Positions 3,890 to 63,828 are shown, counted from the first letter of the stretch. The stretch is DNA of 64,000 bases from Ostrea edulis (GCF_947568905.1 NC_079171.1:25172001-25236000); one strand, 5' to 3'. Notes: generated by a model from the letters alone, not told the origin. A program made the numbers and translations.

Positions 3890-4408
3890 GATTGTAGTAA
3901 TAAAAGATCCTGAAGCAATACTCTGTAGGTAAATGGTACTATTATGCTGGAAGGCAGAAGTTATGATTTTCTAATTAGACGAATGAAAGTATATATAGGT
4001 TTGCGGTCGGTGTTATGTCGAACGCGTTCAATTTTTTGGACCGGTGTTGGCGCGTCGTTGTTTGTTTGGCGATTGGAATCGTGACCAAATCGAGTTTTTT
4101 TAAGGTGCGATATCCCGCGTGGGTGTTTGATAAAAAAAATCTCCAAGTATAGAAGGCAAGTGTTGGTTTGTTATTTTCTGTGCCTGTAACAGAGCACGTT
4201 TTTTTTGGCGAATATCAATCCATTGTTTTGTGTGACAAGAATAAATCATTTGTTTTGGTTTGTAACAAGTTTTATTAAAGGATATTATGTTGCGTATGTA
4301 CGTACATTGTAAATACAACAGTTTTTATATAGCAAGTGGTATATAACAAAGATACATATATAAAATAGACATGTGTACACAGAATTTGAGTGTTTTTTTT
4401 GAAGTCGA

Positions 4409-4846
4409 TCATGCGTCCGCCACAGCCTCGCTTAACGATTGTTCTGCATCTGCGACCGTGTCCACTCTCACAGGTGGTTGTATGTCTGGCATCTCGATTA
4501 TTTCGAAGTGTTCTTGGTCTAGCCATTCTGAGTCTTGGTATCTGTCTTTATGTTCTGTGCATGCAGACTCGGGATTGGCGTTGTTCACGTATACGACTTC
4601 GAAGTCGGGCGAGAACGACAGTTCAGCACACTCATTCGGCGCGTAATTAGGTTTATCGAAGCCTTGCGCCAGTGGTCTCCATGTCGGTTGATACACGTCT
4701 GGAGAGTCGTTGTCATCATTACTATCGGATTCCTCCGCGTGCGGGTTGTATCTGACACTATGTCGGTCGTCTATGACCACCGGTTGTGCATTTTGTTTGG
4801 CGTATTCATGATCTATGTCAGTTTCTCCGATATTGTATGAATTCAT
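4409..4846 (-). CDS. 145-aa acidic hypothetical protein
   Basis: ORF with a truncated paralogue at 33830-33961. Confidence 0.7.
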   Translation of the reverse strand: MNSYNIGETDIDHEYAKQNAQPVVIDDRHSVRYNPHAEESDSNDDNDSPDVYQPTWRPLAQGFDKPNYAPNECAELSFSPDFEVVYVNNANPESACTEHKDRYQDSEWLDQEHFEIIEMPDIQPPVRVDTVADAEQSLSEAVADA

Positions 4847-5043
4847 CTTGGTTTGTGCTTTTTGTTGTTGTGATATAGATATATATATTGATCGATTGGT
4901 GTGGTCTGATAATAATAATATAAAGTACTTTCAGAGGTATATATATACAGTTTAATGCGAGAACTTGTTCGTTATTTCTATCTGGGGAGAAGTTTTGGCG
5001 TATATTGTGCCGTACTGGATAACCTCCGGAGGACAGTAAGTTG

Positions 5044-5231
5044 CGGTATATAATATATATATATTATTGGAGAGGCACGGAGGGCAACTCCGCAGTTAAA
5101 TAATCGAACGTGTTCTAGGCTGGGGGAAAACCCACTTTTGAAGAATCGAACGAGTTCGAGCTTTAGTAACAGCAGCTGTGGAGGGCCGCCCTCCGTGCCT
5201 CTCCAATAATATATATATATATATTACACCG
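5044..5231. repeat. Palindromic pair of origin-like repeat units (P1)
   Basis: About 40-bp inverted arms CGGT(AT)nTATTGGAGAGGCACGGAGGGC enclosing two TCGAAC palindromes and a GGGG-AAAA-CCC hairpin. Confidence 0.85.
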
Positions 5232-5904
5232 TTAGTTTATGGCCTCCACAGTAAATCGACCGGTTGTAGTTTTGGGGACGATTTTGATGTTAAACCTCAT
5301 GTTATTGAGGACCTGTGCATGGTTTTGTGCGTGTTGTGTGTAGTTGTCTAATACAATTTACAAGTATAGAACACAAGTATATGGTTGGCGTTTGATAAAT
5401 TTACAAGTATAGAACACAAGTATATGGTTGGCGATTGATGAAGTTTTTTTTACAAGTCCACGGTTGATGATATAAAAAAATTGCAAGTGTATAACACAAG
5501 TCCACGGTCAGTGTATGATTTGATGATTTGATGGTTTGATAAAGTTACAAGTATATATATAACACAACTACATGGTTAGCGGTTAGATTGAAGTCGCAAG
5601 AAAAACACCAGTCTAGCGTTCATGTTCTAAGTGCGTGTTTTAAATGGGTCAGGTATAACCCGACTAGATGGGTGGTTCAACTGAGTGCACTTTTGAGGTC
5701 AAAGGTCAAATTTTAGATAGCTCGTACTAGGACTGTGTCTGTCGTGCTATTTCGTAAACAAAATGGTAACAACCACAAAGTCGTGCACAAAAGAGATAGG
5801 GGATATTCTCTCCCGGATTTTTCTAAGTATGTGTTGGTGTTTTTGAAATAATATCGCAAGAAAACGTAAGTCCAGAGTTGGTAAGTAAAGTTTCGATAAA
5901 TAAC

Positions 5905-6585
5905 CAAGTTTAACCACCAAAAACTACACACAAAAACAGACAACTAGTGCCTTTCTAATGGATTTTTTCTAAGTATACGATGTACTGTGGAGGGCACATA
6001 GTGACGGTATATAATATATATATATTATTGGAGAGGCACGGAGGGCGGACCTCCACAGCTAAAAGATTGAACACGTTCGAGGCTGGGGATTCCCCGTTTC
6101 TTCGTTTGATAATGCTAAAGATATAGAACACAAGTCCAGGGTTGGTGTTTGATAAAGTTAAAAATATAGAACGCAAGTCCAGGGTTGGCGTTTGATAACG
6201 TTACAAGTTCGTGCTTGACGTTTGATAAAGTTTTAAAAATATAGAACACAAGTCCAAGGTTGGTGTTTTAAATTGAGACCACAGGAAACACAAGTTCGGG
6301 GTTGGGGTTCTAAGTGATATTATAAACAAACACGAGTTCACTTTTATATATGCTAAGTGCGTGCTTTAACGTTTACAACTATATATCCCAGTAAATTTTA
6401 AATAAAGACGAGTTTAACCACTAAAACTACACACAAAAACAGACAACTAGTGCCTTTCTAATGGATTTTTTCTAAGTATACGATGTACTGTGGAGGGCAC
6501 ATAGTGACGGTATATAATATATATATATTATTGGAGAGGCACGGAGGGTAACTCCGCAGTTAAAAAATCGAACGAGTCCGAGCTC
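5905..6585 (+). repeat. About 150-bp direct repeat carrying single origin-like units (6005-6080, 6508-6585) plus about 40-bp tandem repeats
   Basis: AACCACYAAAACTACACACAAAAACAGACAACTAGTGCC...GGCACGGAGGG occurs at about 5905 and about 6410. ATATAGAACRCAAGTCC units at 6120-6260. Confidence 0.8.
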
Positions 6586-7270: not shown

Positions 7271-7293
7271 ACACATGAACATTGCACACACAA

Positions 7294-8286
7294 TTAAAAT
7301 AGTTCCTTGAAGGTTAGCGCCAACCGTCTGGCCTTCATTGATTTGGTAGCACTAACCTTCGATTTCGAAATGTTAGAGTGTGTGTACTTCGTCAGGGCTG
7401 AGTTTTGATGCTGTGGCGAGAACATCTCCGGCGAGCCACACACTCTCGTTGCCTGAATCACACGTTTAAGTTTATTGTCGTTGACCACGACTTTGGGTCC
7501 CGGTGTTCTTGCAGACTTCTTACCGCCCGTCGATTTCTCCGCCGTCGTCTTTAGTATCGCGTTATCCCTGCTGAGATTGTGTTTATTAATAAATTTCCCC
7601 AAGGTGTTGATGGCGGCGGATACCTCCGACAAATCCTTAAATTGCGCCCTGGACGCATCTATACAATTATCCAAGTCGGCCAGAATGGCCTTGATGCTAC
7701 CCAATCTACTGGATAGATCGTTTTCGATCTGTGTTGTACGGTCGTTCACTAACTCTTGCAGATGATTGACTTTAGTGTAATATACACTCTTGACGAAAAT
7801 GCTGCATTTGTCACCATATAAAAAATTGTTAAAAATGCACCACCTATTTCTAATGTGGTGATCAATGATGGGCAATGTCTCGTCCAGATATTTATCTTTG
7901 GGATTCGGTGTATCGATCGATATCCCACAGAAGAAGCACGTGGATTTGGAACAGCTGTTATCGTGGAATAATCCGGATGTTACAAGTTCGTCTATCACAT
8001 TAGCCTTCAATCCGCATCCAACATATGTCTCGCGCCTACGATCTTCGTGGGCGAAGAATTTGTGGGCCGAAGGATGAATGTATTCATGTTTCACACTATC
8101 TTCTGTCGTAATAACTTGGCGTACATTCCCATCAAACGTTAAGCTATAATCGTTTGCACTCTTCACAGTCTTACGGTCGTGCTGTCCCAATTTCACGGCA
8201 TCTGTCGATTTACCCCAAGGGTTCACACACTTAGAGTACGGCTTGGTCCGATTGTTGCCCAAAACTTTAGATTTCATCGCTGACAT
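7294..8286 (-). CDS. 330-aa protein with a divergent BIR-like zinc domain
   Basis: RRETY...LVTSGLF...CFFC-X22-H-X6-C (canonical BIR is CX2CX16HX6C). No RING. Confidence 0.75.
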   Translation of the reverse strand: MSAMKSKVLGNNRTKPYSKCVNPWGKSTDAVKLGQHDRKTVKSANDYSLTFDGNVRQVITTEDSVKHEYIHPSAHKFFAHEDRRRETYVGCGLKANVIDELVTSGLFHDNSCSKSTCFFCGISIDTPNPKDKYLDETLPIIDHHIRNRWCIFNNFLYGDKCSIFVKSVYYTKVNHLQELVNDRTTQIENDLSSRLGSIKAILADLDNCIDASRAQFKDLSEVSAAINTLGKFINKHNLSRDNAILKTTAEKSTGGKKSARTPGPKVVVNDNKLKRVIQATRVCGSPEMFSPQHQNSALTKYTHSNISKSKVSATKSMKARRLALTFKELF

Positions 8287-8435
8287 CGTGGTAAATGATT
8301 AAAAATGATACGATAATAATCTGTCTATAGTTATATTACATAAATCGCACAATACGTTGTGATAATATTATGCGCTACGGAGGATATATATAATCATTAT
8401 AAATCGAACACGTTCATTTTCTTTTACTTTCACTT

Positions 8436-10793
8436 TCACTTTCTCACTGTTGTCTTAATTCGTTTAGCTCTATCGGCCTTCTTCCGAGCATCAATACCTC
8501 GTTGTTTTATGACATGTCGAGCCTCTGCCAAATCTTCGGATACATGTCTAGCGAGTTGTGCAGCCGTAATCATAGTATATTTAAATTCTGGATCATTGTG
8601 ATGAGCTAAATTTTCCTCGTGGATCAGCTGATACCATTTAGCTTCGTTTAGTGCCATGATAGCAATAGCCATCGAACGATGCTTTAATGTTGCCTCACGA
8701 ATTTCGGGAGTATCACCGAACAATTTATCGAGAACATGGGTCATTAGCGAAGCTTTCTTCTGGCCGAGGTTACATAATGCACATGATTGCCGATCCCTTT
8801 GAGCCTCCTCGCGAAACTTGGCGCGCATACTGTTGCGGACTTCAGTAGACTTTCCGATATATCTTGATGGATTGTCGATACCATTTTTAAAACATTTGTC
8901 ACACAGGATCCAGAACTCATTTTTATCGCTGTTCTCGAAATATCTATCTAATACGGCATGTCTAGCACTGTTCGATGTTTCACCTATATCATGATTATCT
9001 AGAATCTGCCTAACCGCTTCTTTCTCAGCCTGGTTATCTATGCGTCTATTCGAGTTAGTATGTCTTGTGTAAAACTCGCTGAATGCCCACAACTCTGGCG
9101 GTTTGAACGGTAAGATTTGAGGTATCTTTATCGGTTTCGATGTTATTATGGCACTAGGCATATATGTACCAATACTTTTCCCCACTTCTTCCGGATCTGC
9201 TGTTTCGAAAAACTTTAACTTATTTGCCCACAGATCCTCGGTTAATCCGAAATTACTGAGGGCCTGACATTGGTACATTTGCGCCACTTGTTCCACTGTA
9301 GATATCGGTATTTTTTTGAACATCGATGTACGTTTGATTTTACTCAACCTTTTGTTGACGTACGCGATGCGTTCTGTGACATAATCATCACTCTTTTCAC
9401 TTTCATCGGCCGGTTCCGCAATGTGTAGAGATCTAAAATCGTCCGATACATCGGTTGCGACATCTATATCTGACAGTATACGATCTTGCACAAGGTTGTC
9501 ATTAGACGGACTCCCCCCTTCGAACATCATACTAGAGAAATCGTGATCGTGTAGATCCACGGTACCATGGTCGACTTGGGTAGGTGAATAACCGTTTCTG
9601 CTTTTAAGATCGCTCTCGTACAACGATCTTTGGGGAATGAACTCGATGTCTCCTATATCGACATTTGTCTCCTTCTGACCATTCTTCATTTCATAGTATT
9701 TTACTACTATTCTTTCCTGATCTAATTGGGCGGTTTTATTCGCTACCGACCGACTTCGTTTTCGTCCATCCCCAACACCAATCGCGACATCATCCTCTCG
9801 ATCTTCTTTAGTTTCCGCGAAGTGTTTGTTCACACTCCGAATTTGATCGTTCATCTGCTTCCACAGGTGTATGGTAGCTCCAGTTATGGAAGTTGTAACT
9901 ATTCTGATAGCGTGTGTGCTAATGACGTCTCGTCTTTCTGCCATTTCTTCTTCATTAAACTTAATGACCTTTATCAAAGTGTCACCAGTCACTCTCTTGG
10001 CAGCCGGATTCAATGGTATGGGTACGGCTACATATCGACCACGATCGTCCGGTCTCAACAACACATGTCCGTGTTCATCTAGTTCCGATATAGCTATCAA
10101 ATCCGCCATCATGTTAGCCAGGTATGAGATCGGAGGTGGCGAGTAGACTGTTTCACCTTTACTATTCAATAGCGTGGCGCTGAGCACCATCTGAGGAGAC
10201 AAGTATCTATCTGGATTATAAATTCCAGATACTACGTGCATGAATTCGAATAGTTTGTAATAGTTAAAGTGACCATAACCAGTAGCTCCTCTCGAAGTCT
10301 TCGGATACTTATGAAGCTTCATCATGTTGGTCACTATTCTAGTATACTGGTCGCCATTAAAGGCTTTCTTGGCACTTGCTACGGTAATCTGTTTAAAGAT
10401 ATCCCGTGGTATTTCCGATATACAAAAACCTTTCCTGAGGTTTGTTTCTAGTGGAATTCCAGAGAAGTTGTAGAAGGCTCTAAGTTTATGAGCTTCATCC
10501 ATATCTGGAGGACACACTCTCCTGTATCTGGTTTGTATACCTTCAGTATTAGCGATATGGTTGGCAACTTCATCGTACCCCAAGCGTTTAGCCATAGCTA
10601 CGCAGAAATGGGCATCATAATCAACTTTCATTTGATAACATCCGCCACACACCATAGCTTCACCATGACAGGCTGGTCGGATGAATATTTCGTCCGACTC
10701 ATTGTAGAACAGTAGCTTTTTATTCTTGGCGAAATATCGTTTGGCAGACATGATTATTTTGGTCGAAAATATCCTTACAACGACTGTGTTCAT
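8436..10793 (-). CDS. 785-aa hypothetical protein with Cys/His clusters
   Basis: Long ORF; CHGEAMVCGGC..HFC, LCDKC and CALC clusters. Confidence 0.85.
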   Translation of the reverse strand: MNTVVVRIFSTKIIMSAKRYFAKNKKLLFYNESDEIFIRPACHGEAMVCGGCYQMKVDYDAHFCVAMAKRLGYDEVANHIANTEGIQTRYRRVCPPDMDEAHKLRAFYNFSGIPLETNLRKGFCISEIPRDIFKQITVASAKKAFNGDQYTRIVTNMMKLHKYPKTSRGATGYGHFNYYKLFEFMHVVSGIYNPDRYLSPQMVLSATLLNSKGETVYSPPPISYLANMMADLIAISELDEHGHVLLRPDDRGRYVAVPIPLNPAAKRVTGDTLIKVIKFNEEEMAERRDVISTHAIRIVTTSITGATIHLWKQMNDQIRSVNKHFAETKEDREDDVAIGVGDGRKRSRSVANKTAQLDQERIVVKYYEMKNGQKETNVDIGDIEFIPQRSLYESDLKSRNGYSPTQVDHGTVDLHDHDFSSMMFEGGSPSNDNLVQDRILSDIDVATDVSDDFRSLHIAEPADESEKSDDYVTERIAYVNKRLSKIKRTSMFKKIPISTVEQVAQMYQCQALSNFGLTEDLWANKLKFFETADPEEVGKSIGTYMPSAIITSKPIKIPQILPFKPPELWAFSEFYTRHTNSNRRIDNQAEKEAVRQILDNHDIGETSNSARHAVLDRYFENSDKNEFWILCDKCFKNGIDNPSRYIGKSTEVRNSMRAKFREEAQRDRQSCALCNLGQKKASLMTHVLDKLFGDTPEIREATLKHRSMAIAIMALNEAKWYQLIHEENLAHHNDPEFKYTMITAAQLARHVSEDLAEARHVIKQRGIDARKKADRAKRIKTTVRK

Positions 10794-10914
10794 ATATTGA
10801 AAGTGATACTGTATTAATAATATAAAATCGGTTTATTACAAATAACATGTGTGCGGTATATAGTACAATTGACTACATAATACATTTTTGTTACAATTTG
10901 CATCAATGGTGATA

Positions 10915-11685
10915 TCACAAAATACTAAGAGGTGACTTGGATCTGGGGCGTTTTCTTGTCTTTTTCTTTGATTCTCTACGTGTTTTCGGTCGTGGTTGTG
11001 GTGCTGGTGATGATAATGCTGAAAATGTTATTAAATCGTCTTCTTCGTCCAACTCTACATCGCTCGTCTTCGACTGTATGTCTGCATCAAAAGACGTTGT
11101 TGTGATAGTTTCCACAACAGAGTTTTCGAGTTCCATATCATCGTCACACTGGTCGTCTCGACAGAGGTGTGGCGTCGTGCTCGGATTATCAACATCCTCT
11201 AATTGAATAGGACAATTGTCAAATCTCATTTTTTTCCGTATATTATCTAACGAACTCGTTGCTGAGCGTTTCTTTAATCTGGCGTCTCGTCGTCTAATGA
11301 TAGTCATAAACACATCGTGATCTTTCTCGGCATCGTACACTACGCTATGTAACTCGGGTACATCCTTAACGACGCTAGCTATTTTCACTTGAGTTACGGG
11401 TTCGACGTCAATATCTACATCATCATCATCACCATAATCTTCTTGGTATCCTAACATACAATGTATACTCGTCAGACCACTATTGTTAATTGCAGTATAG
11501 CCTCGCTTCTGTGGCGATCGTGTTTCATTTACATTGCTATCGTAATCACTATCGTTATCAGGATCGGCATAATCGTCTACTTCACGCTCGTCGTCGGCAT
11601 CATCGAAGCATTCGGTATTATCGTTTTCATGGTCGTCACCATATACAAATTCTTCGTCTGGATCCATGATGGTTTTTTTGTACAC
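10915..11685 (-). CDS. 256-aa acidic protein with basic NLS-like C-terminus
   Basis: ORF with promoter palindrome at about 11758. Confidence 0.8.
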   Translation of the reverse strand: MYKKTIMDPDEEFVYGDDHENDNTECFDDADDEREVDDYADPDNDSDYDSNVNETRSPQKRGYTAINNSGLTSIHCMLGYQEDYGDDDDVDIDVEPVTQVKIASVVKDVPELHSVVYDAEKDHDVFMTIIRRRDARLKKRSATSSLDNIRKKMRFDNCPIQLEDVDNPSTTPHLCRDDQCDDDMELENSVVETITTTSFDADIQSKTSDVELDEEDDLITFSALSSPAPQPRPKTRRESKKKTRKRPRSKSPLSIL

Positions 11686-12015
11686 ACTGTTGATTTGGGT
11701 TGTATATATGTTTTACTAATGTTGGACAACTTATAAATACAATGTGATATATTAAAGGTCGAACACGTTGGATATAAATATCGTTTCTAATAGTAAGTTT
11801 TTAAATCATCACATCCTCTGTGTTTGTAAGTTTGTAAAAATAACTGAAATTCTGTTTTAAATTTGTCGATACATATATTTAGCAAAACATCAAGCATACA
11901 CACGAATATATATAACAGTACAATACGATCATAAAATAAACTAATGTTGAATTATACACACGTTATCATAACATAAAGTTTTTCACAAATGATTCAGTTT
12001 GGCGAAGAGTCATAT

Positions 12016-13935
12016 TCAAGATTCATCGGCATCTTTGGACACTTTTGTAGATTTGGTGGAAATGGTTTCGGTAGTCTTGCGTTTACAACCACAAGTTGAC
12101 ACCCGTGGTCCTATAGGTCGGCGAACCAATGATTCACGATCGACATACCGCATATGCATATCATCGATGTGTAGGGGTTCGGAGAACTGATGGGTACGAG
12201 TTTCGGAAGTCTGAGACTCTGTATCATCTCGCTTGTTTTTCGCACCACTAAACCACCCGTTGGGGTCGTGATACGAATCGCGTTTATCATCTGAATCGTC
12301 CGAATCGGAATCTGAATCGGGGTATTCAGAATCCGAATGTTCTCGTTCTGAATCACGATCGCAGTTTTGATCGGCACGTCGATCATTTTGGTCGCCTGGT
12401 TGATATTCCATCTCCTCCTCACACTTGTTCATGCAATACATGTGACATGGTACTCTAAGTTCAACAATTTCGTGACCTTGATAGTACAGATCCTTAATCG
12501 GTGCTATTGGATGCAACTCAAAGTCGCGCAAGACCAACAGCATAGGTCTGTTCATTCGCTCCCGCATGCGAGCACGACCATCGTTTTTGATCATGTATCC
12601 GTTAGATAATACTGTCAGAATCCTGTCGAGCTTATGTCCGCGGCGTACCTGATTTAACGTGTCCCCAGACGACGTTTGTGCTACCACAATCACAATATCT
12701 GCGTTCCAAGCCGAGTCGAACGCGTATTCTACATTATCTATCCCAACAGATACTGTTAATAATTTATGAAATTCCGACCATTTCTTAACACTGTCGGTGA
12801 TGAAATGGTAATATTGGGTAGGCGTCGATATTATCAAGGGTTGTCCTTCGCCTGATAATGACAACGCGTTAAGGATCGTGTTGCTCACATGAGAACAGTT
12901 CTCTTGCTTGGAACCCGGCGATCTGATGGCTCGTATTCTGTTGGTATTCAGGTGATCATCTGAACCGGCTGTCATTACGTGTACTATTTCGGGGTCGATC
13001 GTGTATACGTCTGGATACGTGGGTTGCGTTACGCGATGCGCATGTACGGTAGTCGACACATTCATATCCACTTCAAATCGAGCCCCGGGTCTCGCCAGAC
13101 TCCTAAAATTCAAATCTTTAGCATCGATCCATGTCATGTCGGTTGGACCTACAGAAACAACCTCCGTGGATAGCACGATAATTTTGGGTTTCCCAACCTC
13201 CTTTAACCGGATGATGTCTGTTCCATTGATATAGGCATATCCCGAGTCAAGGCACACCATGGTTTTCCTGAGCACTTCTCGTTTCGATGAATTCGTGTCA
13301 CCAGAGTCAGCTTCCATTGGTGGGACGAGCAGGACTATGATGTCGTGTCCTTTGGCTTCTAACCATTTTTTACCAGCGTGAATGAAGGGTTTCTCGAGTC
13401 CCATAACATAGACCGTTTGGTTATCCGATCTGGTACTCGGTGCGATATCCGCATCAGCAACATTCGATTGTGGCAAAATTCTTTCGTGCTTGATCAACTG
13501 TACCAGTCTATGCCACTCAGATTCTGGGGCGACAATTCCAGTCTTCATCCTCGTGGAAGCTTTGGCGACCGTGTCTATGATGGCATCGATCGCAGCTCGA
13601 TTGTTCAGCATAGCATTCGCCCCGTTTAAAATCCTGTGCGCCATGTCCAATTCGAGCATTTCGAGCCTTAGATCACGATGCATATCATTAATGTAGAGTG
13701 TATCTGGAGGTTGGCTGTTAATGTAATGCTCGTGCATGCCCATACTTCGGATGAATTCTGGAATTAGCGATCCTGATCCGCGTGCCAATTCTTTGCGAAC
13801 CCTGGTCACCTCTTCCATAACGGTAACCCATCCACTACTTCTTCTCATTTTGCCGCATTGGTTGCTACACCCAAACATAGTGATTTTGTTGTGAATGTAT
13901 CGTATTTTATGAAATGAGACAAGATTATTCAGCAA
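12016..13935 (-). CDS. 639-aa protein with two degenerate CRESS-Rep SF3-helicase-like domains (likely start 13878)
   Basis: SDNQTVYVMG..VCLD..KPKIIVLS, and DNVEYAF..DIVIVV..VLSNGYMIK..RPMLLVL..HEIVEL, follow the motif order of Rep helicase domains. No Walker A GKS. Confidence 0.75.
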   Translation of the reverse strand: MLNNLVSFHKIRYIHNKITMFGCSNQCGKMRRSSGWVTVMEEVTRVRKELARGSGSLIPEFIRSMGMHEHYINSQPPDTLYINDMHRDLRLEMLELDMAHRILNGANAMLNNRAAIDAIIDTVAKASTRMKTGIVAPESEWHRLVQLIKHERILPQSNVADADIAPSTRSDNQTVYVMGLEKPFIHAGKKWLEAKGHDIIVLLVPPMEADSGDTNSSKREVLRKTMVCLDSGYAYINGTDIIRLKEVGKPKIIVLSTEVVSVGPTDMTWIDAKDLNFRSLARPGARFEVDMNVSTTVHAHRVTQPTYPDVYTIDPEIVHVMTAGSDDHLNTNRIRAIRSPGSKQENCSHVSNTILNALSLSGEGQPLIISTPTQYYHFITDSVKKWSEFHKLLTVSVGIDNVEYAFDSAWNADIVIVVAQTSSGDTLNQVRRGHKLDRILTVLSNGYMIKNDGRARMRERMNRPMLLVLRDFELHPIAPIKDLYYQGHEIVELRVPCHMYCMNKCEEEMEYQPGDQNDRRADQNCDRDSEREHSDSEYPDSDSDSDDSDDKRDSYHDPNGWFSGAKNKRDDTESQTSETRTHQFSEPLHIDDMHMRYVDRESLVRRPIGPRVSTCGCKRKTTETISTKSTKVSKDADES

Positions 13936-14061
13936 TCAGTGAAATGATCGTTCTCCAGTAAACCTGAGCTTGTTTATATATCCCAAATTTGGTTTATTAA
14001 CATGAACGTGTTAAATGCTTTAAATCGATCGGAGTTCAGCGAAAGGAGGGCAGCCCTTTGA

Positions 14062-14135
14062 CGGTGTATATATATATATATTATTAGAGCGGCACGGAGG
14101 GCAACTCCGCAGCTAAAGAATCGAACGTGTTCGAC
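14062..14135 (+). repeat. Single origin-like repeat unit between divergent Rep-derived genes
   Basis: CGGTG(TA)nTTATTAGAGCGGCACGGAGGGCAACTCCGCAGCTAAAGAATCGAACGTGTTCGA. Confidence 0.85.
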
Positions 14136-14242
14136 AGTCCTTTGGGTATATATACCAAAAATGAAAATCAAAATCAAAAACTCCAGTCTTAGAACATCGA
14201 TTGCTATTTATGTGTATACATATCTGCTTTTATTAAGAAACC

Positions 14243-14956
14243 ATGTCAGATTTGTCACAAGCAATGCTCGACGCCGACGCCATGGCTGAGTACGAAAATA
14301 ATATGATCATCAAGGCGGCCACTGATCTGAATTCTGGACGTTTGACATCTCAGATGTACGATATGTATGGAGATTGGTATGGGAGGAATATGTCGCGCAT
14401 AATGCTTAAAGCGAGCTATCTGAGGGATCCAGCGACGTACGTCGCAAGGGAGTTGAGACTTAAACGACCCATGTTACCCGATCTGAGAAATGCAGCCGTT
14501 CAGCGAAGGGGAACTCGTTTGGCAAACAGAGAGAAGGCGGTGAAGTCTGCACATGAAAGTAAACCGGAGGTTCACGACACGACCCAATCGATGTTACAAT
14601 GGCAGATTCGTGTGGCCGATTTAGCTGCGTTTACTAACTCTGACAATAGAGTCCTGTTTGTGGTGGGCAAGACTAAAGGACAAGGAAAATCTTGGATGGC
14701 GCAGTATTTGCACAAAACACTGAATTCAAACATGTTTCGTACGTGTTGTTCTGACTATTTGGCGCTATCTGGTAACATCACCAAGTATTCCGTGTTTGAC
14801 GTGGATTGTGACGAGTGCGATTTCGTCTACAGCACCTTCTACAGACACCTGGATGATACCGACGTGAAGGCTATAGTGTTTTGTAACTTCTTCCCGACGA
14901 AAATGCCGCATAGTGATGTGTTTTACATCGATCAGTACGATAAGTACCATGTGTGA
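14243..14956 (+). CDS. 237-aa CRESS-Rep-like oligomerisation plus SF3 P-loop protein lacking the endonuclease domain
   Basis: LQWQ...DNRVLFVVGKTKGQGKSWMAQYL (Walker A at 14666-14692), VFDV (Walker B), IVFCNFFP (motif C). Resembles the nanovirus-type Rep C-terminus. Confidence 0.8.
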   Translation: MSDLSQAMLDADAMAEYENNMIIKAATDLNSGRLTSQMYDMYGDWYGRNMSRIMLKASYLRDPATYVARELRLKRPMLPDLRNAAVQRRGTRLANREKAVKSAHESKPEVHDTTQSMLQWQIRVADLAAFTNSDNRVLFVVGKTKGQGKSWMAQYLHKTLNSNMFRTCCSDYLALSGNITKYSVFDVDCDECDFVYSTFYRHLDDTDVKAIVFCNFFPTKMPHSDVFYIDQYDKYHV

Positions 14957-15133
14957 GACATTTGTTATCTGTTATATGTATTGTCAATGTTTATGAACTT
15001 ATATTTCAATGTACGCATGTGTTTCAATAAAAATTGCTTGAATTCAATACGACTGTTCTGTGGTTAAAGTTTGGGTATAAAAATGATTCCGTTTTGATGA
15101 TCATGGAGGCTAATATGGAGGGCAGCCCTTTGA

Positions 15134-15320
15134 CAGTGTATATATATATATATTATTAGAGCGGCACGGAGGGCAACTCCGCAGCTAAATGATCGAACGT
15201 GTTCGAGACCTGGGGGAAACCCACTATCAAAAAATCGAAGCTGTTCGAGGTTTTAAGAGAACAATAGCTATGGAGGATGCCCTCCGTGCCTCTCCAATAA
15301 TATATATATATTATATACCG
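15134..15320. repeat. Palindromic pair of origin-like repeat units (P5)
   Basis: Inverted arms with the same spacer orientation as P1. Confidence 0.85.
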
Positions 15321-15577
15321 GCAATGTGGCCCTCCGTAGTTAATTGGATGGTGATAAAAATGTGTACCGTCGTATCAAATAACCGCTCATGAGAGAGAAA
15401 AAACTAGCTATATCTTTGTAACAATCGCTTTTATTTATATGTGTTCATTTTTATATATACGCATACATATATAGCAACGATGTATAATTACAATCAATCG
15501 TATCACACAGTGTTCTTAAAATTTCATAGCTTAATAACAGTCTTATACTATATGTTTCTGTAACAAATCTAGTTTCA

Positions 15578-16159
15578 TCACAGTCCAACTTTCATTCTAT
15601 ATATAGTCGACAGTTCCTCCCTAAGCATTCTAGATCTAGACAAACGGAGAGGTTTGGCCTCCGATAGTACGGACCGCTTTCTCTTCACTATCTTAGCCAA
15701 TTGTTCAATCAACCTATCCTGTTCGATGTTTGCAGACACGACTTCTAATAAGATGTCAATGACGTCGTCCGTGCGCAACTTGTGTATTTCTTCTGGCCTA
15801 CAACCATACATCTGTGCGATTGCTTGATGAATGGTATCCTTGTCGACGGTTTCAGTTATCATTTCTACAGTATGATCTCCCGACCCAAATCCACTTCCTT
15901 CATTCCCATTTTCTGTAGCAGGTTTAGCCTTGTGTCGAGAATCATCGTGATCTATGCTTATATGATGAACGTCCTTATGAGAATCCTTATGGTGATGGAT
16001 GTTAGGCTTGTGGATAAATTCACCCCCGGAACCTTCTTCAATCTCGACACGATGATCTTTATCTGCCACTAAAAAATCACCATCTATAGGTTGGCGAACG
16101 GCAGCAGATAATGCTCCACTCACACATAGTGCTACGATAACTACACCAAACTTAACCAT
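15578..16159 (-). CDS. 193-aa secreted protein (signal peptide, acidic Ser-Gly motifs, KRKRS)
   Basis: MVKFGVVIVALCVSGALSA; EEGSGG; EGSGFGSGD. Confidence 0.8.
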   Translation of the reverse strand: MVKFGVVIVALCVSGALSAAVRQPIDGDFLVADKDHRVEIEEGSGGEFIHKPNIHHHKDSHKDVHHISIDHDDSRHKAKPATENGNEGSGFGSGDHTVEMITETVDKDTIHQAIAQMYGCRPEEIHKLRTDDVIDILLEVVSANIEQDRLIEQLAKIVKRKRSVLSEAKPLRLSRSRMLREELSTIYRMKVGL

Positions 16160-52588: not shown

Positions 52589-52731
52589 AAGTAAAAGAAA
52601 ATGAACGTGTTCGATTTATAATGATTATATATATCCTCCGTAGCGCATAATATTATCACAACGTATTGTGCGATTTATGTAATATAACTATAGACAGATT
52701 ATTATCGTATCATTTTTAATCATTTACCACG

Positions 52732-53724
52732 ATGTCAGCGATGAAATCTAAAGTTTTGGGCAACAATCGGACCAAGCCGTACTCTAAGTGTGTGAACCCT
52801 TGGGGTAAATCGACAGATGCCGTGAAATTGGGACAGCACGACCGTAAGACTGTGAAGAGTGCAAACGATTATAGCTTAACGTTTGATGGGAATGTACGCC
52901 AAGTTATTACGACAGAAGATAGTGTGAAACATGAATACATTCATCCTTCGGCCCACAAATTCTTCGCCCACGAAGATCGTAGGCGCGAGACATATGTTGG
53001 ATGCGGATTGAAGGCTAATGTGATAGACGAACTTGTAACATCCGGATTATTCCACGATAACAGCTGTTCCAAATCCACGTGCTTCTTCTGTGGGATATCG
53101 ATCGATACACCGAATCCCAAAGATAAATATCTGGACGAGACATTGCCCATCATTGATCACCACATTAGAAATAGGTGGTGCATTTTTAACAATTTTTTAT
53201 ATGGTGACAAATGCAGCATTTTCGTCAAGAGTGTATATTACACTAAAGTCAATCATCTGCAAGAGTTAGTGAACGACCGTACAACACAGATCGAAAACGA
53301 TCTATCCAGTAGATTGGGTAGCATCAAGGCCATTCTGGCCGACTTGGATAATTGTATAGATGCGTCCAGGGCGCAATTTAAGGATTTGTCGGAGGTATCC
53401 GCCGCCATCAACACCTTGGGGAAATTTATTAATAAACACAATCTCAGCAGGGATAACGCGATACTAAAGACGACGGCGGAGAAATCGACGGGCGGTAAGA
53501 AGTCTGCAAGAACACCGGGACCCAAAGTCGTGGTCAACGACAATAAACTTAAACGTGTGATTCAGGCAACGAGAGTGTGTGGCTCGCCGGAGATGTTCTC
53601 GCCACAGCATCAAAACTCAGCCCTGACGAAGTACACACACTCTAACATTTCGAAATCGAAGGTTAGTGCTACCAAATCAATGAAGGCCAGACGGTTGGCG
53701 CTAACCTTCAAGGAACTATTTTAA
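52732..53724 (+). CDS. IR copy of the BIR-like 330-aa protein
   Basis: Identical translation. Confidence 0.78.
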   Translation: MSAMKSKVLGNNRTKPYSKCVNPWGKSTDAVKLGQHDRKTVKSANDYSLTFDGNVRQVITTEDSVKHEYIHPSAHKFFAHEDRRRETYVGCGLKANVIDELVTSGLFHDNSCSKSTCFFCGISIDTPNPKDKYLDETLPIIDHHIRNRWCIFNNFLYGDKCSIFVKSVYYTKVNHLQELVNDRTTQIENDLSSRLGSIKAILADLDNCIDASRAQFKDLSEVSAAINTLGKFINKHNLSRDNAILKTTAEKSTGGKKSARTPGPKVVVNDNKLKRVIQATRVCGSPEMFSPQHQNSALTKYTHSNISKSKVSATKSMKARRLALTFKELF

Positions 53725-53855
53725 TTGTGTGTGCAATGTTCATGTGTGTAAAATGGAACACAAGACTAGAAATGATGTAAATATGTTTGATTGTATATAT
53801 CGTTGTATTATTTTTAAATCTTGTTTTTGAAAAATGTAGCTTGTGATTTTATGAT

Positions 53856-54746: not shown

Positions 54747-54759
54747 CTCTCGGCGAGAG

Positions 54760-54769: not shown

Positions 54770-54770
54770 G

Positions 54771-58761: not shown

Positions 58762-59055
58762 TATCGCTTGTATATATTTAACAGCTGACTTGGTGAGGTA
58801 TGATGTCGAAGGTTGATATGACTATATAAGCTATACTGTGAGTTTATATACCAATCGATCCGAATGATATGTCGAACACGTTCGATCTTTGCAAGCACCA
58901 ATCAAAATGTTGAAGTTAATGATAATAATTTATTTTGAACATGTCAAGTTAAACAATATATACAACATATTAAAAAAATATACATCAATGATAACCACGT
59001 AGTATGGTTAAGAACCTTGGGTCATTTTGTAACATAATACTAGCAAGGTTTCACA

Positions 59056-61071: not shown

Positions 61072-61306
61072 TATCGCTGTATATATTTAACAGCTGACTT
61101 GATGATGTATTATGTTGAAGGTTGATATGACTATGAACTATATTGTGAGTTTACATATCAATCGATTCGAGCGATATGTCGAACACGTTCGATCTTTGTA
61201 AAGTACCAATCAATATGTTTGAAGTTGATTATAACAATTTATTTTGCACATATGTCAAGTTTAAAAAAATACATACAACATACTAAAACATATACATCAA
61301 TGTTAA

Positions 61307-62827
61307 TCACATAGAGTAACTAAGAACCTTGGGTGGTTCCAACTCTGGCACAAGTCCAGTTAAGAATTCGGGACCAGTATATGCCTCTAACTCGGGGTGT
61401 ACAATCCTGTTGCTGAAATGCGGTCTACCGTCTTGCAAGGTTGGCGTTTCGGCATCTTGACATACGCATTTAGAAGAACTGCATCTTTTGCAGACACCAT
61501 CTCGATTCGCCAAACGATTTAATAGAATACAGTGCGAAATATTGTATACTCGTATATCTATATCTACAAGCTTGCGCATCTCGTCCACCACGTCCGATAC
61601 TGAAAACCTCTCTAACAGTGGATGTAAGGACGTCATTCTCAGCAATTCTGCAGTCAATCGTTCTTTAGTTTGCGGCGATCTTGCTGCGGATCCGTATAAC
61701 TCTTCAATGTAATCCTGCACGATCGCATGGTCTCGGAATGTCAATCCTAGAATGCTCTCGATGATCGAGCGTCTTTCGTCTTGTGTGACAGATCCCATAA
61801 CGTTATCCTTGTAGTAGTGATACAAGATAGATTTGATCTGAGGCGTTGTAAGTTTCGATCTGATGTGTCCACAAGCGTTAGAACGTATCGCATGTTCGCG
61901 ATAAGGATCGGATTTTTCGTCCTCCCAATTCAACACATTGACCCCACAAAAAAAGCATTTTATCTCACACTCTTCGATATTACTATGTGGTTGATCACAG
62001 TAAAATCCAGCCTTGGCCCATTTTTCATTGTAACCTAGTTTATTTGCGACACTACTCAAGGGTTTAAACGATCTCGTCCTGGTCGGACACGAGATCATTT
62101 TGAACATGTTGTTTTTTTCGCAATCTGGGTTTGTAGCTGCAACGATCCTATAATTATCAACAAATGTTTTGTTCACCAACCACCAAATTCGTCGACGCAT
62201 AACATCATCGAACTTGCGAGCAACCGGGGCGACATTCGCAAACGCCCAGTCTAACATTCGTATGTGATCTTCGTACGCAACTGTCCGTTCGCTCAAAATC
62301 AATGGCGGAAATTGGGGTAGATCCTTTGGGGCGACTTCTGGGCCGTACATCCACGATATAGAATCTACTATAGACGATATGTACATGCGTAGTCCAAATT
62401 TATTATCTTCGTTCATACACCTGCTGCGCATTAGCGCGATTTTATCCCTAAGCATCAAGCACTCCATTGCGGATGCGGCACATTCTTCAGATTGTGTAGG
62501 TATATTATATTTCTTGAACTGACAATTTGGATTCATGCGCAAGTGAATCTCTCTTGGATCGTCATCCTTTGACCAATTACCCTTCTCTAGCTGGCAGTAG
62601 AAACACTTTAGTAAGTCGTCGGGCTCATTGTAGGTGAGATTTTCAGAGCTACGATAAAATCCAGCATTCGCAAGCTTTACCAGGTCCGGTTTATTCTCGC
62701 CTACAATATTATCGTACATCGTGTGCAAAGCGCCACTGTTCATCATCGATAGCATTCTATCAACCACCCGTTGCATGTGAATTTTTACGGGACACCCTCC
62801 GTTAACATCGCTCATGTTGTTAGCCAT
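61307..62827 (-). CDS. iap: IAP array gene 4: 2 BIR, RING deleted
   Basis: Two BIRs; ends at EPPKVLSYSM*. Confidence 0.85.
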   Translation of the reverse strand: MANNMSDVNGGCPVKIHMQRVVDRMLSMMNSGALHTMYDNIVGENKPDLVKLANAGFYRSSENLTYNEPDDLLKCFYCQLEKGNWSKDDDPREIHLRMNPNCQFKKYNIPTQSEECAASAMECLMLRDKIALMRSRCMNEDNKFGLRMYISSIVDSISWMYGPEVAPKDLPQFPPLILSERTVAYEDHIRMLDWAFANVAPVARKFDDVMRRRIWWLVNKTFVDNYRIVAATNPDCEKNNMFKMISCPTRTRSFKPLSSVANKLGYNEKWAKAGFYCDQPHSNIEECEIKCFFCGVNVLNWEDEKSDPYREHAIRSNACGHIRSKLTTPQIKSILYHYYKDNVMGSVTQDERRSIIESILGLTFRDHAIVQDYIEELYGSAARSPQTKERLTAELLRMTSLHPLLERFSVSDVVDEMRKLVDIDIRVYNISHCILLNRLANRDGVCKRCSSSKCVCQDAETPTLQDGRPHFSNRIVHPELEAYTGPEFLTGLVPELEPPKVLSYSM

Positions 62828-63006
62828 AGTCGAAATACTTTTTATGACTTTGATGGTACACTTATTTCATTATAAATAGCATAAATATCGAACGTGTTCG
62901 ATTACAATAATGACTTTAAGATAGTATTATAATTATATCATCAAATTTATTACAATGAATGTGTTAAATACATATATATACGATAGTACAAATGCCAACA
63001 ACAATT

Positions 63007-63468
63007 TTAGTCTATCATGCGAAGCTTGCCACCGGATATGTGTAATGGTTCATCATCAGTATCGTCATCTTCATCAACTTCTTCCATTAAGCGAATTTTA
63101 CCACCTGATAAATATAACGGTTCGTCATCCGAATCGTCATCTTCGTCAATTTCATCCATTAAGCGAAGCTTACCATCGGATAACTGCGATGTATCACTAT
63201 CTACATCGTCATCCTCGTCAATTTCTTCAAGTCTTAGCGCCATGCGCTGCTCATCATATTTACGCAACTCTTCCTTCAATAGTAGCAGTTCATGATGTGT
63301 GTCCTCAGCGAGATTCGCTTGCTCCGCCATTCTCTCTTTTTTTGTACACCACATTGCAAATGTTACTACACATCGACCAAGTAGTGACGATTCGGCCCAG
63401 CGTATAAGAGCTATCGTTATCGATAGACTCAAATATGTCAGATCTGGTGTTTCTTGGTGAGACTTCAT
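63007..63468 (-). CDS. 153-aa acidic protein with ~24-aa repeats
   Basis: RLM(D/E)E(I/V)DEDDD..DEPL..SGGK repeats; palindrome at about 63580. Confidence 0.7.
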   Translation of the reverse strand: MKSHQETPDLTYLSLSITIALIRWAESSLLGRCVVTFAMWCTKKERMAEQANLAEDTHHELLLLKEELRKYDEQRMALRLEEIDEDDDVDSDTSQLSDGKLRLMDEIDEDDDSDDEPLYLSGGKIRLMEEVDEDDDTDDEPLHISGGKLRMID

Positions 63469-63828
63469 TTTAACAGACGTTTGTAATAATATATTTTATA
63501 TATGTATTACTACCGTATTGGTATATTGGAATTATTCGAAGTTTTTAACCGGTTTATACCAAACACTGTAATATATAAATCCAACGTGTTCGAGGTTACC
63601 CATATTGGGTCAATTGTGATATTATATCCACAATATATACCATAAAGACAGATTTAAATTTGTCGATACTTATATTTGGTTTGATAAATAGACATGAAAA
63701 AAATGCACATGTGAACATACATATATAAAATTACAATTTTGGTTACAATCCATAATGTTTTCATAAATGTTCTTTCACGAAATCCAGAATGCCCCAATGT
63801 TCATCAGCTCGGTATATAATCGATCACT

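What the first reader, a model, noticed from the sequence alone, without database searches (positions are those of the whole stretch)
4017..63594. A single palindrome (TCGAACNYGTTCGA) marks promoters of about 20 genes
Full or near copies lie about 60-160 bp upstream of probable ATGs, often with a TATA-like tract between. Approximate positions: 4017, 8403, 11758, 14121, 18416, 20060, 20882, 21452, 24625, 25598, 27415, 29754, 30226, 31134, 32190, 33468, 41305, 58872, 61179, 62887, 63580. Two (21452, 25598) serve divergent pairs. The same motif is built into the origin-like repeat, linking transcription and replication control. Inference: a regulon bound by a dimeric factor.
Basis: partly seen in the sequence, partly recalled or inferred. 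Interest (0 to 1): 0.75.

Follow-up and report, generated by a model that had tools for sequence, protein, structure and literature searches.

The report
Palindrome-plus-TATA promoters in virus-like element
A 14-base palindrome sits just upstream of a TATA box in front of about two thirds of the genes of a densely packed, virus-like DNA element in an animal chromosome. Pairs of the same palindrome form the core of hairpin-forming repeats, so one dimeric protein probably switches most of the element's genes on and may also mark its replication origins.

Summary
All 21 listed positions hold the palindrome (pattern TCGAAC-NN-GTTCGA, at most 2 mismatches). The window has 43 such sites against 3.2 expected. 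In intergenic DNA there are 29 against 0.44 expected.

With one arm of a 9.6-kb inverted repeat left out, 23 of 38 sites are centred 50-180 nt upstream of an ATG (p about 1e-15). Of 39 ORFs of at least 100 aa, 25 have such a site. The 24 promoter sites fall into 20 groups with unrelated flanks. A TATA box follows on the gene side (median gap 20 nt), then about 80 nt to the ATG. Four sites serve divergent gene pairs.

Pairs of sites 42 nt apart form the centre of three distinct 220-nt inverted repeats flanked by (TA)n tracts. One of these lies between convergent gene ends, so it is not a coding-gene promoter there.

The host DNA is an intronless, ORFan-rich element with IAP and RING genes, on a 77-Mb contig. 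Its lineage is unresolved, with no hallmark gene in the window.

The best reading is an upstream activator site for a dimeric factor, reused in repeats that resemble baculovirus homologous regions (hrs). The factor, the transcription starts and the origin function are all inferred.

The parts
4018..4031 (.). palindrome site (1 mismatch), 128 nt upstream of the ATG of ORF 2861-3889(-); TATA 20 nt on the gene side
5053..5224 (.). double unit (origin-like inverted repeat): two 90-nt modules head to head, with palindrome copies at 5104-5117 and 5146-5159, 42 nt apart, and (TA)n tracts on both flanks
5355..6310 (.). non-coding zone with about 10 copies of a 43-nt repeat carrying a half-site-like GAACAC. 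Two single 90-nt modules lie here (5989-6079 with site 6067-6080; 6492-6582 with site 6568-6581)
7271..16894 (.). inverted-repeat arm A (9624 nt); identical to arm B except for a 6-nt length difference in a short hexamer run near 8396-8437
8404..8417 (.). site (2 mismatches), 117 nt upstream of ORF 7294-8286(-); duplicate at 52601-52614 before ORF 52732-53724(+)
11759..11772 (.). site (1 mismatch), 91 nt upstream of ORF 10915-11667(-); duplicate at 49252-49265
14045..14134 (.). single 90-nt module with an exact site at 14121-14134. It is shared by divergent ORFs 14243-14956(+) (108 nt) and 12016-13878(-) (242 nt); duplicate at 46890-46979
15114..15338 (.). double unit in the inverted repeat, with sites at 15193-15206 and 15235-15248. 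It lies between the 3' ends of convergent ORFs 14243-14956(+) and 15578-16159(-); duplicate at 45686-45910
18416..18429 (.). site (2 mismatches), 98 nt upstream of ORF 17241-18317(-)
20060..20073 (.). site (2 mismatches), 87 nt upstream of ORF 19187-19972(-)
20882..20895 (.). site (1 mismatch), 80 nt upstream of ORF 20292-20801(-)
21452..21465 (.). site (1 mismatch) shared by divergent ORFs 21563-23350(+) (BIR+RING IAP-like) and 20893-21321(-)
24623..24636 (.). site (2 mismatches), 101 nt upstream of ORF 23490-24521(-) and 90 nt upstream of the small, doubtful ORF 24727-25038(+)
25598..25611 (.). site (1 mismatch) shared by divergent ORFs 25697-26308(+) (RING) and 25164-25523(-)
27415..27428 (.). 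site (1 mismatch), 85 nt upstream of ORF 26616-27329(-) (coiled-coil family)
29755..29768 (.). exact site, 99 nt upstream of the probable start 29655 of ORF 29071-29793(-)
30225..30238 (.). site (2 mismatches), 103 nt upstream of ORF 29780-30121(-)
31134..31147 (.). site (1 mismatch), 101 nt upstream of ORF 30451-31032(-)
32191..32204 (.). exact site, 134 nt upstream of ORF 31430-32056(-)
33469..33482 (.). exact site, 156 nt upstream of ORF 32539-33312(-), a paralogue of 2861-3889; its flanks are 72% like those of site 4018
34167..34385 (.). double unit, with sites at 34254-34267 and 34296-34309; a partial module lies at 33675-33730
35061..35151 (.). single 90-nt module with site 35137-35150 (1 mismatch), 95 nt upstream of ORF 34721-35041(-)
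38127..38236 (.). 33-nt tandem repeat (3.2 copies by TRF) holding four successively degenerate palindrome copies (38136-38149, 38169-38182 and two weaker). It lies upstream of the 873-aa acidic, Cys-rich ORF 35393-38014(-)
39534..39637 (.). single module with an exact site at 39624-39637, inside the 2.1-kb G+C-rich non-coding repeat zone 38015-40164 between divergent ORFs; a partial module lies at 39911-39981
41306..41319 (.). site (2 mismatches) followed at once by a TATA tract. The first ATG (41325) lies in that tract; the next in-frame ATG is at 41382, in ORF 41325-42074(+)
42251..42264 (.). weak site (2 mismatches), 96 nt upstream of ORF 42361-43077(+), with a TATA 21 nt on the gene side
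44130..53747 (.). inverted-repeat arm B (9618 nt), carrying duplicate sites at 45776-45789, 45818-45831, 46890-46903, 49252-49265 and 52601-52614
58872..58885 (.). exact site, 110 nt upstream of IAP-like ORF 57013-58761(-)
61179..61192 (.). exact site, 107 nt upstream of IAP-like ORF 59482-61071(-); its flanks are 82% like those of site 58872
62888..62901 (.). exact site, 60 nt upstream of IAP-like ORF 61307-62827(-)
63580..63593 (.). site (1 mismatch), 111 nt upstream of ORF 63007-63468(-)

Best explanation
The 14-nt palindrome, extended to about 20-24 nt by an A-rich 5' flank and a T-rich 3' flank, is an upstream promoter element of a large virus-like DNA element that is transcribed in the nucleus.

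It lies a few to about 40 nt (median 20) on the 5' side of a TATA box, which is itself about 80 nt before the ATG. That places it roughly 45-65 nt before the expected transcription start. A homodimeric sequence-specific DNA-binding protein most likely binds it and helps the TATA-bound RNA polymerase II machinery assemble, so about two thirds of the element's genes form one co-regulated set. I think the protein is more likely encoded by the element (an early transactivator) than by the host.

Because the site is symmetric, one copy can serve two divergent TATA boxes. Two copies 42 nt apart also form the centre of 220-nt inverted repeats, flanked by easily melted (TA)7-9 tracts and scattered in non-coding repeat zones. 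There the same protein would act as an enhancer-binding and possibly origin-binding factor, as IE-1 does on baculovirus homologous regions.

Shown: the enrichment, position, spacing and symmetry of the sites, conservation of the motif within unrelated flanks, and the anatomy of the repeats. Inferred: the transcription starts, the binding protein, activation rather than repression, and origin function.
For: Site counts: 43 against 3.2 expected; 29 against 0.44 in intergenic DNA.

Position: 23 of 38 independent sites lie 50-180 nt upstream of ATGs (p = 1.6e-15); 25 of 39 ORFs of at least 100 aa carry one.

Oriented alignment gives motif, then TATA, then ATG. The median gaps are 20 and 81 nt, and TATA is enriched on the gene side (18 of 27 against 24.6%, p = 5e-6).

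Core columns are 84-100% conserved, the centre is purine then pyrimidine, and the flanks are symmetric A/T.

The 24 promoter sites fall into 20 groups with unrelated flanks, so the motif itself is what is kept.

Four sites sit between divergent ORFs.

Double units: the conserved anatomy is seen in three distinct copies. The single-strand DNA fold has z = -9. The copy at 15114-15338 lies between convergent gene ends.

Geometry precedent: a palindrome of the same layout (T-nn-AAC-nn-GTT-nn-A) is bound by a dimer of a helix-turn-helix repressor in mycobacteria (PMC1995591).

The element looks like nuclear viral DNA: 72% coding, intronless ORFs, TATA boxes, IAP and RING genes, and 9.6-kb inverted repeats.
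Against: There is no transcript-end data, so the starts are assumed from the TATA boxes.

No ORF in the window has a recognisable DNA-binding domain (Pfam; PDB sequence search). Two structure predictions were unusable (pLDDT 43 and 39).

Fourteen of 39 ORFs lack a good site.

Many sites have a second TATA-like tract directly abutting the motif, so which TATA is used is uncertain.

In the double units the AT tracts are on the flanks, not at the centre. The arms are the same module that acts as a promoter elsewhere, so an origin role is not required.
Confidence: 0.6

Rival explanations
1. The palindrome is a binding site for a host transcription factor (for example a stress- or immunity-induced dimer) that the element has adopted. 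Its genes would then fire when that host factor is active, and no element-encoded binder would exist.
For: No DNA-binding protein is recognisable among about 45 ORFs scanned. The promoters otherwise look like ordinary host-type TATA promoters. The spacer of the double units also holds a conserved short G-run/C-run mini-palindrome that could be a second, host-type site.
Against: Only 64 kb of the element is visible, and most ORFs have no recognisable family at all, so absence of a known fold says little. No paper in the searchable library contains the motif strings. Use at two thirds of genes and in origin-like repeats is typical of virus-encoded master regulators.
Confidence: 0.25
2. The long double units are not origins. 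They would be bidirectional promoters or enhancers built from two promoter modules, perhaps driving non-coding RNAs. The link to replication would then be illusory, while the promoter role of single sites stands.
For: Each arm is the same 90-nt module (motif, a 38-nt conserved stretch, (TA)n, GGAGGRCAG) that precedes ORFs at 14045-14134 and 35061-35151. The left arm of 5053-5224 points at ORF 4409-4846(-).
Against: The unit at 15114-15338 lies between two convergent 3' ends, and both arms would give antisense transcripts. The units form long hairpins with flanking AT tracts and cluster with other tandem repeats in non-coding zones, as known viral origin and enhancer regions do. Lytic origins of herpesviruses are often themselves transcribed, so the two roles do not exclude each other (general knowledge).
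Confidence: 0.35
3. The site is a negative element, either an operator for a repressor or a CpG-rich target for methylation. It would keep an integrated element silent rather than activate it.
For: Each site carries 2-4 CpG. The same palindrome layout is a repressor operator in bacteria (PMC1995591). The element sits in a 77-Mb contig, that is, probably in a chromosome.
Against: The site lies upstream of the TATA box rather than over the TATA or the start, which is the usual place for an activator. CpG is not depleted anywhere in the window (observed/expected 1.03-1.32), which argues against long-term germ-line methylation.
Confidence: 0.1
4. The copies are remnants of a dispersed short repeat (a MITE-like or recombination-prone module) spread through the element, and their position before genes is incidental.
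For: A 90-nt module family does exist in at least nine places.
Against: Twenty of 24 promoter sites have flanks unrelated to any other (median best flank identity 44%). Spacing to the TATA box and the ATG is constrained. Sites are nearly absent from long ORFs: four weak 2-mismatch hits, about the chance number.
Confidence: 0.05

Closest known systems
Baculovirus homologous regions (hrs) and the IE-1 transactivator
   Same: Imperfect palindromes occur both in dispersed non-coding repeat regions (which act as enhancers and putative origins) and singly near early promoters that use host RNA polymerase II and TATA boxes. They are bound by a dimeric virus-encoded activator. IAP genes with BIR and RING domains are present. 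(General knowledge of the system. The hr enhancer role is also stated in PMC13513840, whose abstract appears.)
   Different: No baculovirus or nudivirus core gene and no IE-1 family match in about 45 ORFs. The palindrome is shorter. It sits at a fixed place before the TATA box of most genes rather than mainly in hrs. The genome has 9.6-kb inverted repeats.
[quoted passage not shown]
   Same: A unique region is flanked by long identical inverted repeats (OsHV-1 IRS/TRS 9.7 kb; here 9.6 kb). BIR and RING gene families are present, more than half of the ORFs have no homologues, and TATA-type transcription units are used. A palindromic stem-loop is taken as the candidate origin (PMC9836095; PMC8537636; PMC5552708).
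   Different: The unique region here is 27.2 kb, not 3.5 kb. No protein similarity to any named malacoherpesvirus protein was returned. No herpesvirus hallmark gene is in the window. For the known malacoherpesviruses, a MEME search of the 100 nt before starts found no convincing 5' motif (PMC5552708).
Endogenous nimaviruses of crustaceans (majaniviruses and relatives)
   Same: These are large DNA viruses integrated in animal chromosomes, with expanded BIR-containing gene families and many hypothetical genes (PMC10871703).
   Different: No WSSV-homologue family, tyrosine recombinase or telomere-type flank is seen in the window. That paper calls clearly defined inverted repeats unique to one clade, and those are 46-nt terminal repeats. 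It does not mention a promoter palindrome.
Papillomavirus E2 sites and Epstein-Barr virus EBNA1 sites
   Same: A short palindrome bound by a dimeric viral protein is used both next to promoters and inside the replication origin, coupling transcription and replication (general knowledge; analogy of logic only).
   Different: These are small genomes with a handful of sites and unrelated viruses. No E2 or EBNA1 family match was found here.
KstR-type (TetR family) operators of mycobacteria
   Same: The palindrome layout is identical (T-nn-AAC-nn-GTT-nn-A, 14 nt). It is shown to bind a protein dimer and to mark a regulon of dozens of intergenic sites (PMC1995591).
   Different: This is a bacterial repressor system. 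Here the context is eukaryotic (TATA boxes, BIR/RING genes, a eukaryote-type tRNA-Ile(AAT), a 77-Mb contig), and no TetR-family domain was found. The likeness concerns binding geometry only.

Membership tests
Baculovirus hr / IE-1 system | Dispersed non-coding homologous regions made of repeats that each contain an imperfect palindrome | tested here: met
   There are four non-coding repeat zones (4850-6830, 14957-15577 with its IR copy, 33500-35390, 38015-40164) containing modules with the palindrome. This is a likeness of design, not sequence homology.
Baculovirus hr / IE-1 system | An IE-1 family transactivator and baculovirus core genes | tested here: not met
   Pfam scans of about 45 ORFs gave only BIR and RING domains and weak coiled-coil matches. 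Only 64 kb of the element could be examined.
Malacoherpesviridae | [quoted passage not shown] | tested here: inconclusive
   One unique region of 27.2 kb is flanked by 9.6-kb inverted repeats. The rest of the architecture lies outside the window, and the sizes differ from OsHV-1 (PMC9836095).
Malacoherpesviridae | Herpesvirus hallmark genes (terminase ATPase, capsid protein, DNA polymerase) | tested here: inconclusive
None is in the window.
Malacoherpesviridae | Protein similarity to OsHV-1 or HaHV-1 proteins | tested here: not met
   The 785-aa ORF has no relative in 5.8e9 proteins (word search) or in 1.84e9 representatives (full HMMER). The 620-aa ORF has one unnamed relative (65% identity) on short contigs. 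The nearest hits of the IAP-like ORF are a scallop IAP and an amphioxus IAP.
Malacoherpesviridae | BIR (IAP) and RING gene families | tested here: met
   Five ORFs have BIR domains (three also a RING), one ORF has a RING only, and one has a weak BIR-like match. The feature is not exclusive to this family.
Endogenous Nimaviridae (majanivirus-like) | WSSV-homologue core genes, an integrase and insertion into microsatellite, telomere or rDNA repeats | tested here: inconclusive
   None is seen in the window. The ends of the element are not in the window.
RNA polymerase II TATA promoter with an upstream activator site | A TATA box about 25-35 nt before the transcription start, with the activator site upstream of it | not testable with these tools
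   The TATA position relative to the motif and the ATG fits, but no transcript 5' ends are available.
Viral replication origin | An inverted repeat with an easily melted AT-rich tract and sites for an initiator protein | tested here: inconclusive
   The anatomy is present. Initiator binding and replication cannot be assessed from sequence.

The most novel reading that the evidence does not exclude
The window belongs to an undescribed lineage of large nuclear DNA virus resident in an animal chromosome. Most of its proteins have no detectable relatives. Almost its whole gene set, together with its hr-like origin or enhancer repeats, would be governed by one element-encoded dimeric master regulator acting through a single palindrome. 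That palindrome would be set in helical register with the TATA box (gaps cluster near 0-3, 9-14, 18-23 and 37-41 nt).
Probability: 0.3. Interest if true: 0.8.

Novelty: new variant of a known kind. Interest (0 to 1): 0.62.

Why it matters
A single, easily recognised cis-element in front of most genes gives a direct handle on the regulation of an otherwise opaque element whose proteins are nearly all ORFans. It predicts transcription units and their direction. It separates a motif-bearing from a motif-less gene class, possibly kinetic classes. It also gives a sequence signature for finding related elements in other genomes.

If the same site also marks origins, this would be another independent case of a large DNA virus coupling transcription and replication through one dimeric factor. 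The only motif scan I found for the known invertebrate herpesviruses examined just 100 nt before the starts and found nothing convincing (PMC5552708). The sites here are centred 68-164 nt upstream of the ATG, and most of them lie beyond 100 nt. A wider look at such genomes may therefore be worthwhile.

Tried and rejected
Binding protein. Pfam scans of about 45 ORFs and PDB sequence searches of the 873-, 785-, 620-, 358- and 262-aa ORFs gave nothing useful. AlphaFold2 without an alignment on the 237-aa and 262-aa ORFs of the inverted repeat gave pLDDT 43 and 39. I therefore ran no fold search.

Lineage. The 785-aa ORF has no relative in either protein collection. The IAP-like ORF hits only itself plus a scallop and an amphioxus IAP. 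The 620-aa ORF hits itself plus one unnamed 65% relative.

Second promoter motif. A 12-mer shared upstream of the motif-less ORFs 8436-10793 and 15578-16159 is not enriched (9 hits against 11.4 expected), so I dropped it.

Poly(A) signals. Only 13 of 39 ORFs have AATAAA or ATTAAA within 120 nt of the stop. This is compatible with shared 3' ends but is not evidence either way.

Helical phasing of motif and TATA. The Rayleigh test gives p about 0.003 at a period of 9.5-10 nt. The result depends on which TATA-like tract is chosen and on the periods tried, so I keep it only as a lead.

Literature. No paper holds the motif strings. Searches on malacoherpesvirus promoters and origins gave only the stem-loop remark.

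Rejected readings. The window is not bacterial or phage DNA: it has BIR/RING genes, TATA boxes, a tRNA-Ile(AAT) with a T-run terminator, and lies on a 77-Mb contig. It is not an ordinary host gene cluster: it is 72% coding and intronless, with spacers of 100-300 nt.

Full report
**1. What the window is**

The 64-kb window is 41% G+C with no N runs. With ATG-started ORFs it is 72% coding. It holds about 57 back-to-back, intronless ORFs separated by 100-300 nt.

It contains a large inverted repeat, with arms at 7271-16894 and 44130-53747. The arms are identical except for a 6-nt length difference in a short hexamer run, and they enclose 27.2 kb of unique DNA.

Pfam recognises only BIR and RING domains:
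- a BIR+RING ORF at 21563-23350(+);
- four tandem, diverged IAP-like paralogues at 55019-62827(-), 36-68% identical to one another;
- a RING ORF at 25697-26308(+);
- a weak BIR-like match in 7294-8286(-).

Everything else is unassigned.

The BIR+RING ORF has an identical protein on a 77.1-Mb contig. Its next-best hits are a scallop IAP (29% identity) and an amphioxus IAP. The 785-aa ORF has no relative at all, either in the word search or in a full HMMER pass over 1.84 billion representatives. The 620-aa ORF has one unnamed relative of 65% identity on contigs of about 2.3 kb.

The only RNA gene is a eukaryote-type tRNA-Ile(AAT), followed by a T-run. CpG is not depleted (observed/expected 1.2).

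My reading is a large DNA virus-like element of an animal, transcribed in the nucleus and sitting in (or assembled into) a chromosome. Its lineage is unresolved. It resembles malacoherpesviruses in architecture and gene families, and endogenous nimaviruses in its BIR expansion and chromosomal residence. No hallmark gene of either is in the window.

I did not see obviously broken genes, but I did not survey for them.

**2. The observation**

The search pattern, which is also the sequence of exact copies such as 14121-14134, is TCGAAC-NN-GTTCGA.
- Whole window: 43 sites with at most 2 mismatches, against 3.2 +/- 1.9 in shuffles.
- Intergenic DNA only: 29 sites against 0.44 in Markov simulations.
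- Five sites are copies inside the second repeat arm, leaving 38 independent sites (10 exact, 16 with one mismatch, 12 with two).

Column counts show 84-100% conservation at the twelve specified positions. The centre is purine then pyrimidine (AC 11, GT 9, GC 7). The 5' flank is A-rich and the 3' flank T-rich, so the symmetric site is really about 20-24 nt long.

**3. Position**

Of the 38 sites, 23 are centred 50-180 nt upstream of the first ATG of an ORF of at least 100 aa. That zone is 8.7% of the DNA (p = 1.6e-15). Within intergenic DNA alone the figure is 20 of 29 against 20.8% expected (p = 3e-8).

Of 39 such ORFs, 25 have a site. Two more fit after correcting an over-long ORF start: 29071-29793 probably starts at 29655 (from its paralogues), and 41325-42074 probably starts at 41382 because the first ATG lies in the TATA tract. 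Some motif-less ORFs have a degenerate copy (3-4 mismatches) before a TATA tract, namely 4409-4846, 12016-13878, 18619-19086 and 55019-56779. Others have none.

The few hits inside long ORFs are all 2-mismatch ones, about the number expected by chance.

**4. Promoter grammar**

When oriented by the downstream gene, the order is motif, a short spacer, a TATA box, then about 80 nt to the ATG. A strict TATA hexamer lies within 45 nt on the gene side in 18 of 27 cases, against 24.6% of random intergenic windows (p = 5e-6). The median gap is 20 nt, and the median TATA-to-ATG distance is 81 nt.

The motif is therefore upstream of the TATA box, about 45-65 nt before a presumed start. With a looser TATA definition the gaps cluster near 0-3, 9-14, 18-23 and 37-41 nt (Rayleigh p about 0.003 at a period of 9.5-10 nt). 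This depends on analytical choices and is only a lead.

Four sites lie between divergent ORFs: 14121, 21452, 24623 and 25598.

Clustering the 45-nt flanks shows that the 24 promoter sites form 20 groups with unrelated flanks. Only four pairs share flanks: 4018/33469, 14121/35137, 27415/29755 and 58872/61179. Conservation of the motif therefore does not come from copied promoters.

**5. The origin-like repeat**

A 90-nt module recurs at least nine times. It consists of GGAGGRCAG, a (TA)7-9 tract, a conserved stretch of about 38 nt that can form a small hairpin, and then the palindrome.

Single modules precede ORFs (14045-14134, 35061-35151) or lie in non-coding zones (5989-6079, 6492-6582, 39534-39637). 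Two modules placed head to head give a 220-nt imperfect inverted repeat, with two palindrome copies 42 nt apart at the centre and the (TA)n tracts outside. These double units are at 5053-5224, 15114-15338 (with a copy in the other arm) and 34167-34385. As single-stranded DNA the unit folds with z = -9.

The unit at 15114-15338 lies between the 3' ends of two convergent ORFs, so there it is not the promoter of a protein-coding gene.

The units sit in repeat-rich non-coding zones:
- 4850-6830, which also has about ten copies of a 43-nt repeat with a half-site-like GAACAC;
- 33500-35390;
- the G+C-rich 38015-40164, with several tandem arrays.

GGAGGRCAG itself occurs 10 times against 0.35 expected. 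It lies 2-25 nt beyond the TATA tract, in either orientation.

The 873-aa acidic, cysteine-rich ORF (35393-38014) is preceded by four tandem, progressively degenerate palindrome copies with a 33-nt period.

**6. Mechanism**

I commit to the following. The palindrome is the site of a homodimeric DNA-binding protein that activates TATA-dependent RNA polymerase II promoters from a fixed upstream position, giving one large co-regulated gene set. The same protein occupies paired sites in hr-like repeats that act as enhancers and perhaps origins.

My confidence in each step is:

| Step | Confidence |
|---|---|
| Promoter element | about 0.85 |
| Dimeric binder | about 0.7 |
| Binder encoded by the element rather than the host | about 0.5 |
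| Origin function | about 0.35 |

A precedent for the binding geometry comes from the mycobacterial TetR-type repressor KstR. It binds as a dimer to a palindrome of exactly this layout and marks a regulon of dozens of intergenic sites (PMC1995591).

I could not name the binding protein. No ORF has a known DNA-binding domain, and the two structure predictions I ran were unusable.

**7. Comparison with known systems**

The design is closest to the baculovirus homologous regions and their IE-1 activator, and in logic to papillomavirus E2 and EBV EBNA1. Membership in any of these is not supported, because their proteins are not found here.

[quoted passage not shown] No protein similarity was returned, however. 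A published MEME scan of the 100 nt before their starts found no convincing 5' motif (PMC5552708).

No paper in the searchable library contains the motif strings.

I rate this a new variant of a known kind: palindromic activator sites shared between promoters and origin or enhancer repeats of a large DNA virus.

**8. Steps left out, and a slip**

I therefore did not run the search for related loci, collection scans with the DNA search, the look-up of encoding contigs or accession fetches. This excludes three things:
- the flanks of the window;
- the 2.3-kb contig that carries the identical 600-aa protein;
- the DNA of the 65% relative.

It means that phylogenetic footprinting and any inference of transcript ends could not be done.

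Slip: while reasoning I recalled from memory short recognition strings of several known host and viral DNA-binding factors. I stopped when I noticed. Comparisons with those systems are therefore by name only and are untested.

Noticed in passing
54770-54844 (-): A eukaryote-type tRNA-Ile gene (anticodon AAT, Rfam 68 bits), followed by a run of T on its own strand. It lies inside the gene-dense element, between ORF 53955-54746 and the IAP-like cluster.
   Followed up: partly
7271-16894 and 44130-53747: A 9.6-kb inverted repeat encloses 27.2 kb. The arms are identical except for a 6-nt length difference in a hexamer run near 8396-8437. ORF 16245-17033 crosses the repeat boundary, so its two copies differ at the N-terminus (262 against 180 aa).
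   Followed up: partly
55019-62827 (-): Four tandem IAP-like paralogues (586, 582, 529 and 506 aa; 36-68% identical) share a roughly 240-aa N-terminal part of unknown family. Three of the four have an exact palindrome upstream. The fourth (55019-56779) has only a half-site.
   Followed up: partly
2233, 5028, 14045, 15117, 24594, 34377, 38105, 39547 (and IR copies): GGAGGRCAG occurs 10 times against 0.35 expected. It always lies 2-25 nt beyond a TATA or (TA)n tract, in either orientation. It may be a second element near the transcription start.
   Followed up: partly
5355-5590 and 6100-6310: About ten copies of a 43-nt repeat, tandem and dispersed, each with a GAACAC half-site-like core. They lie in a 2-kb zone without ORFs.
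   Followed up: no
35393-40164: A G+C-rich island (51-53% against 41% overall). It holds an 873-aa acidic, Cys-rich ORF and a 2.1-kb non-coding zone with several tandem arrays, including a perfect 62-nt x 2.9 repeat at 38734-38914. The cumulative GC skew reaches its minimum here, where gene orientation switches from the minus to the plus strand.
   Followed up: no
whole window: CpG observed/expected is 1.03-1.32 in every 8-kb block, so there is no depletion. This argues against long residence under germ-line methylation.
   Followed up: no
12016-13878 (-): The 620-aa ORF has an identical 600-aa protein on a separate 2.3-kb contig, and a 65%-identical, 570-aa relative on contigs of about 2.3 kb from run assemblies. 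Relatives of the element therefore exist, and these short contigs may be transcripts. The DNA was not fetched.
   Followed up: no
26616-27329, 29071-29793, 29780-30121 (-): A small family of predicted coiled-coil proteins (29-32% identical). Each is preceded by the palindrome and a TATAAA box at an 18-20 nt gap.
   Followed up: partly
10868-10879 and 16253-16264 (with IR copies): An identical 12-mer lies upstream of two motif-less ORFs (8436-10793, 15578-16159). It is not enriched overall (9 hits against 11.4 expected).
   Followed up: yes
15209-15222, 5124-5136, 34275-34290: The 28-nt spacer between the two palindrome copies of each double unit keeps a short G-run/A-run/C-run mini-palindrome in all three distinct copies. 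It may be a second protein-binding site.
   Followed up: no
1-2860: 2.8 kb has no ORF above 77 aa and no palindrome site. It does have tandem repeats (77-179, 2347-2399) and one TATA-plus-GGAGGGCAG pair near 2210-2241. It is unclear whether this is a non-coding part of the element or its edge.
   Followed up: no
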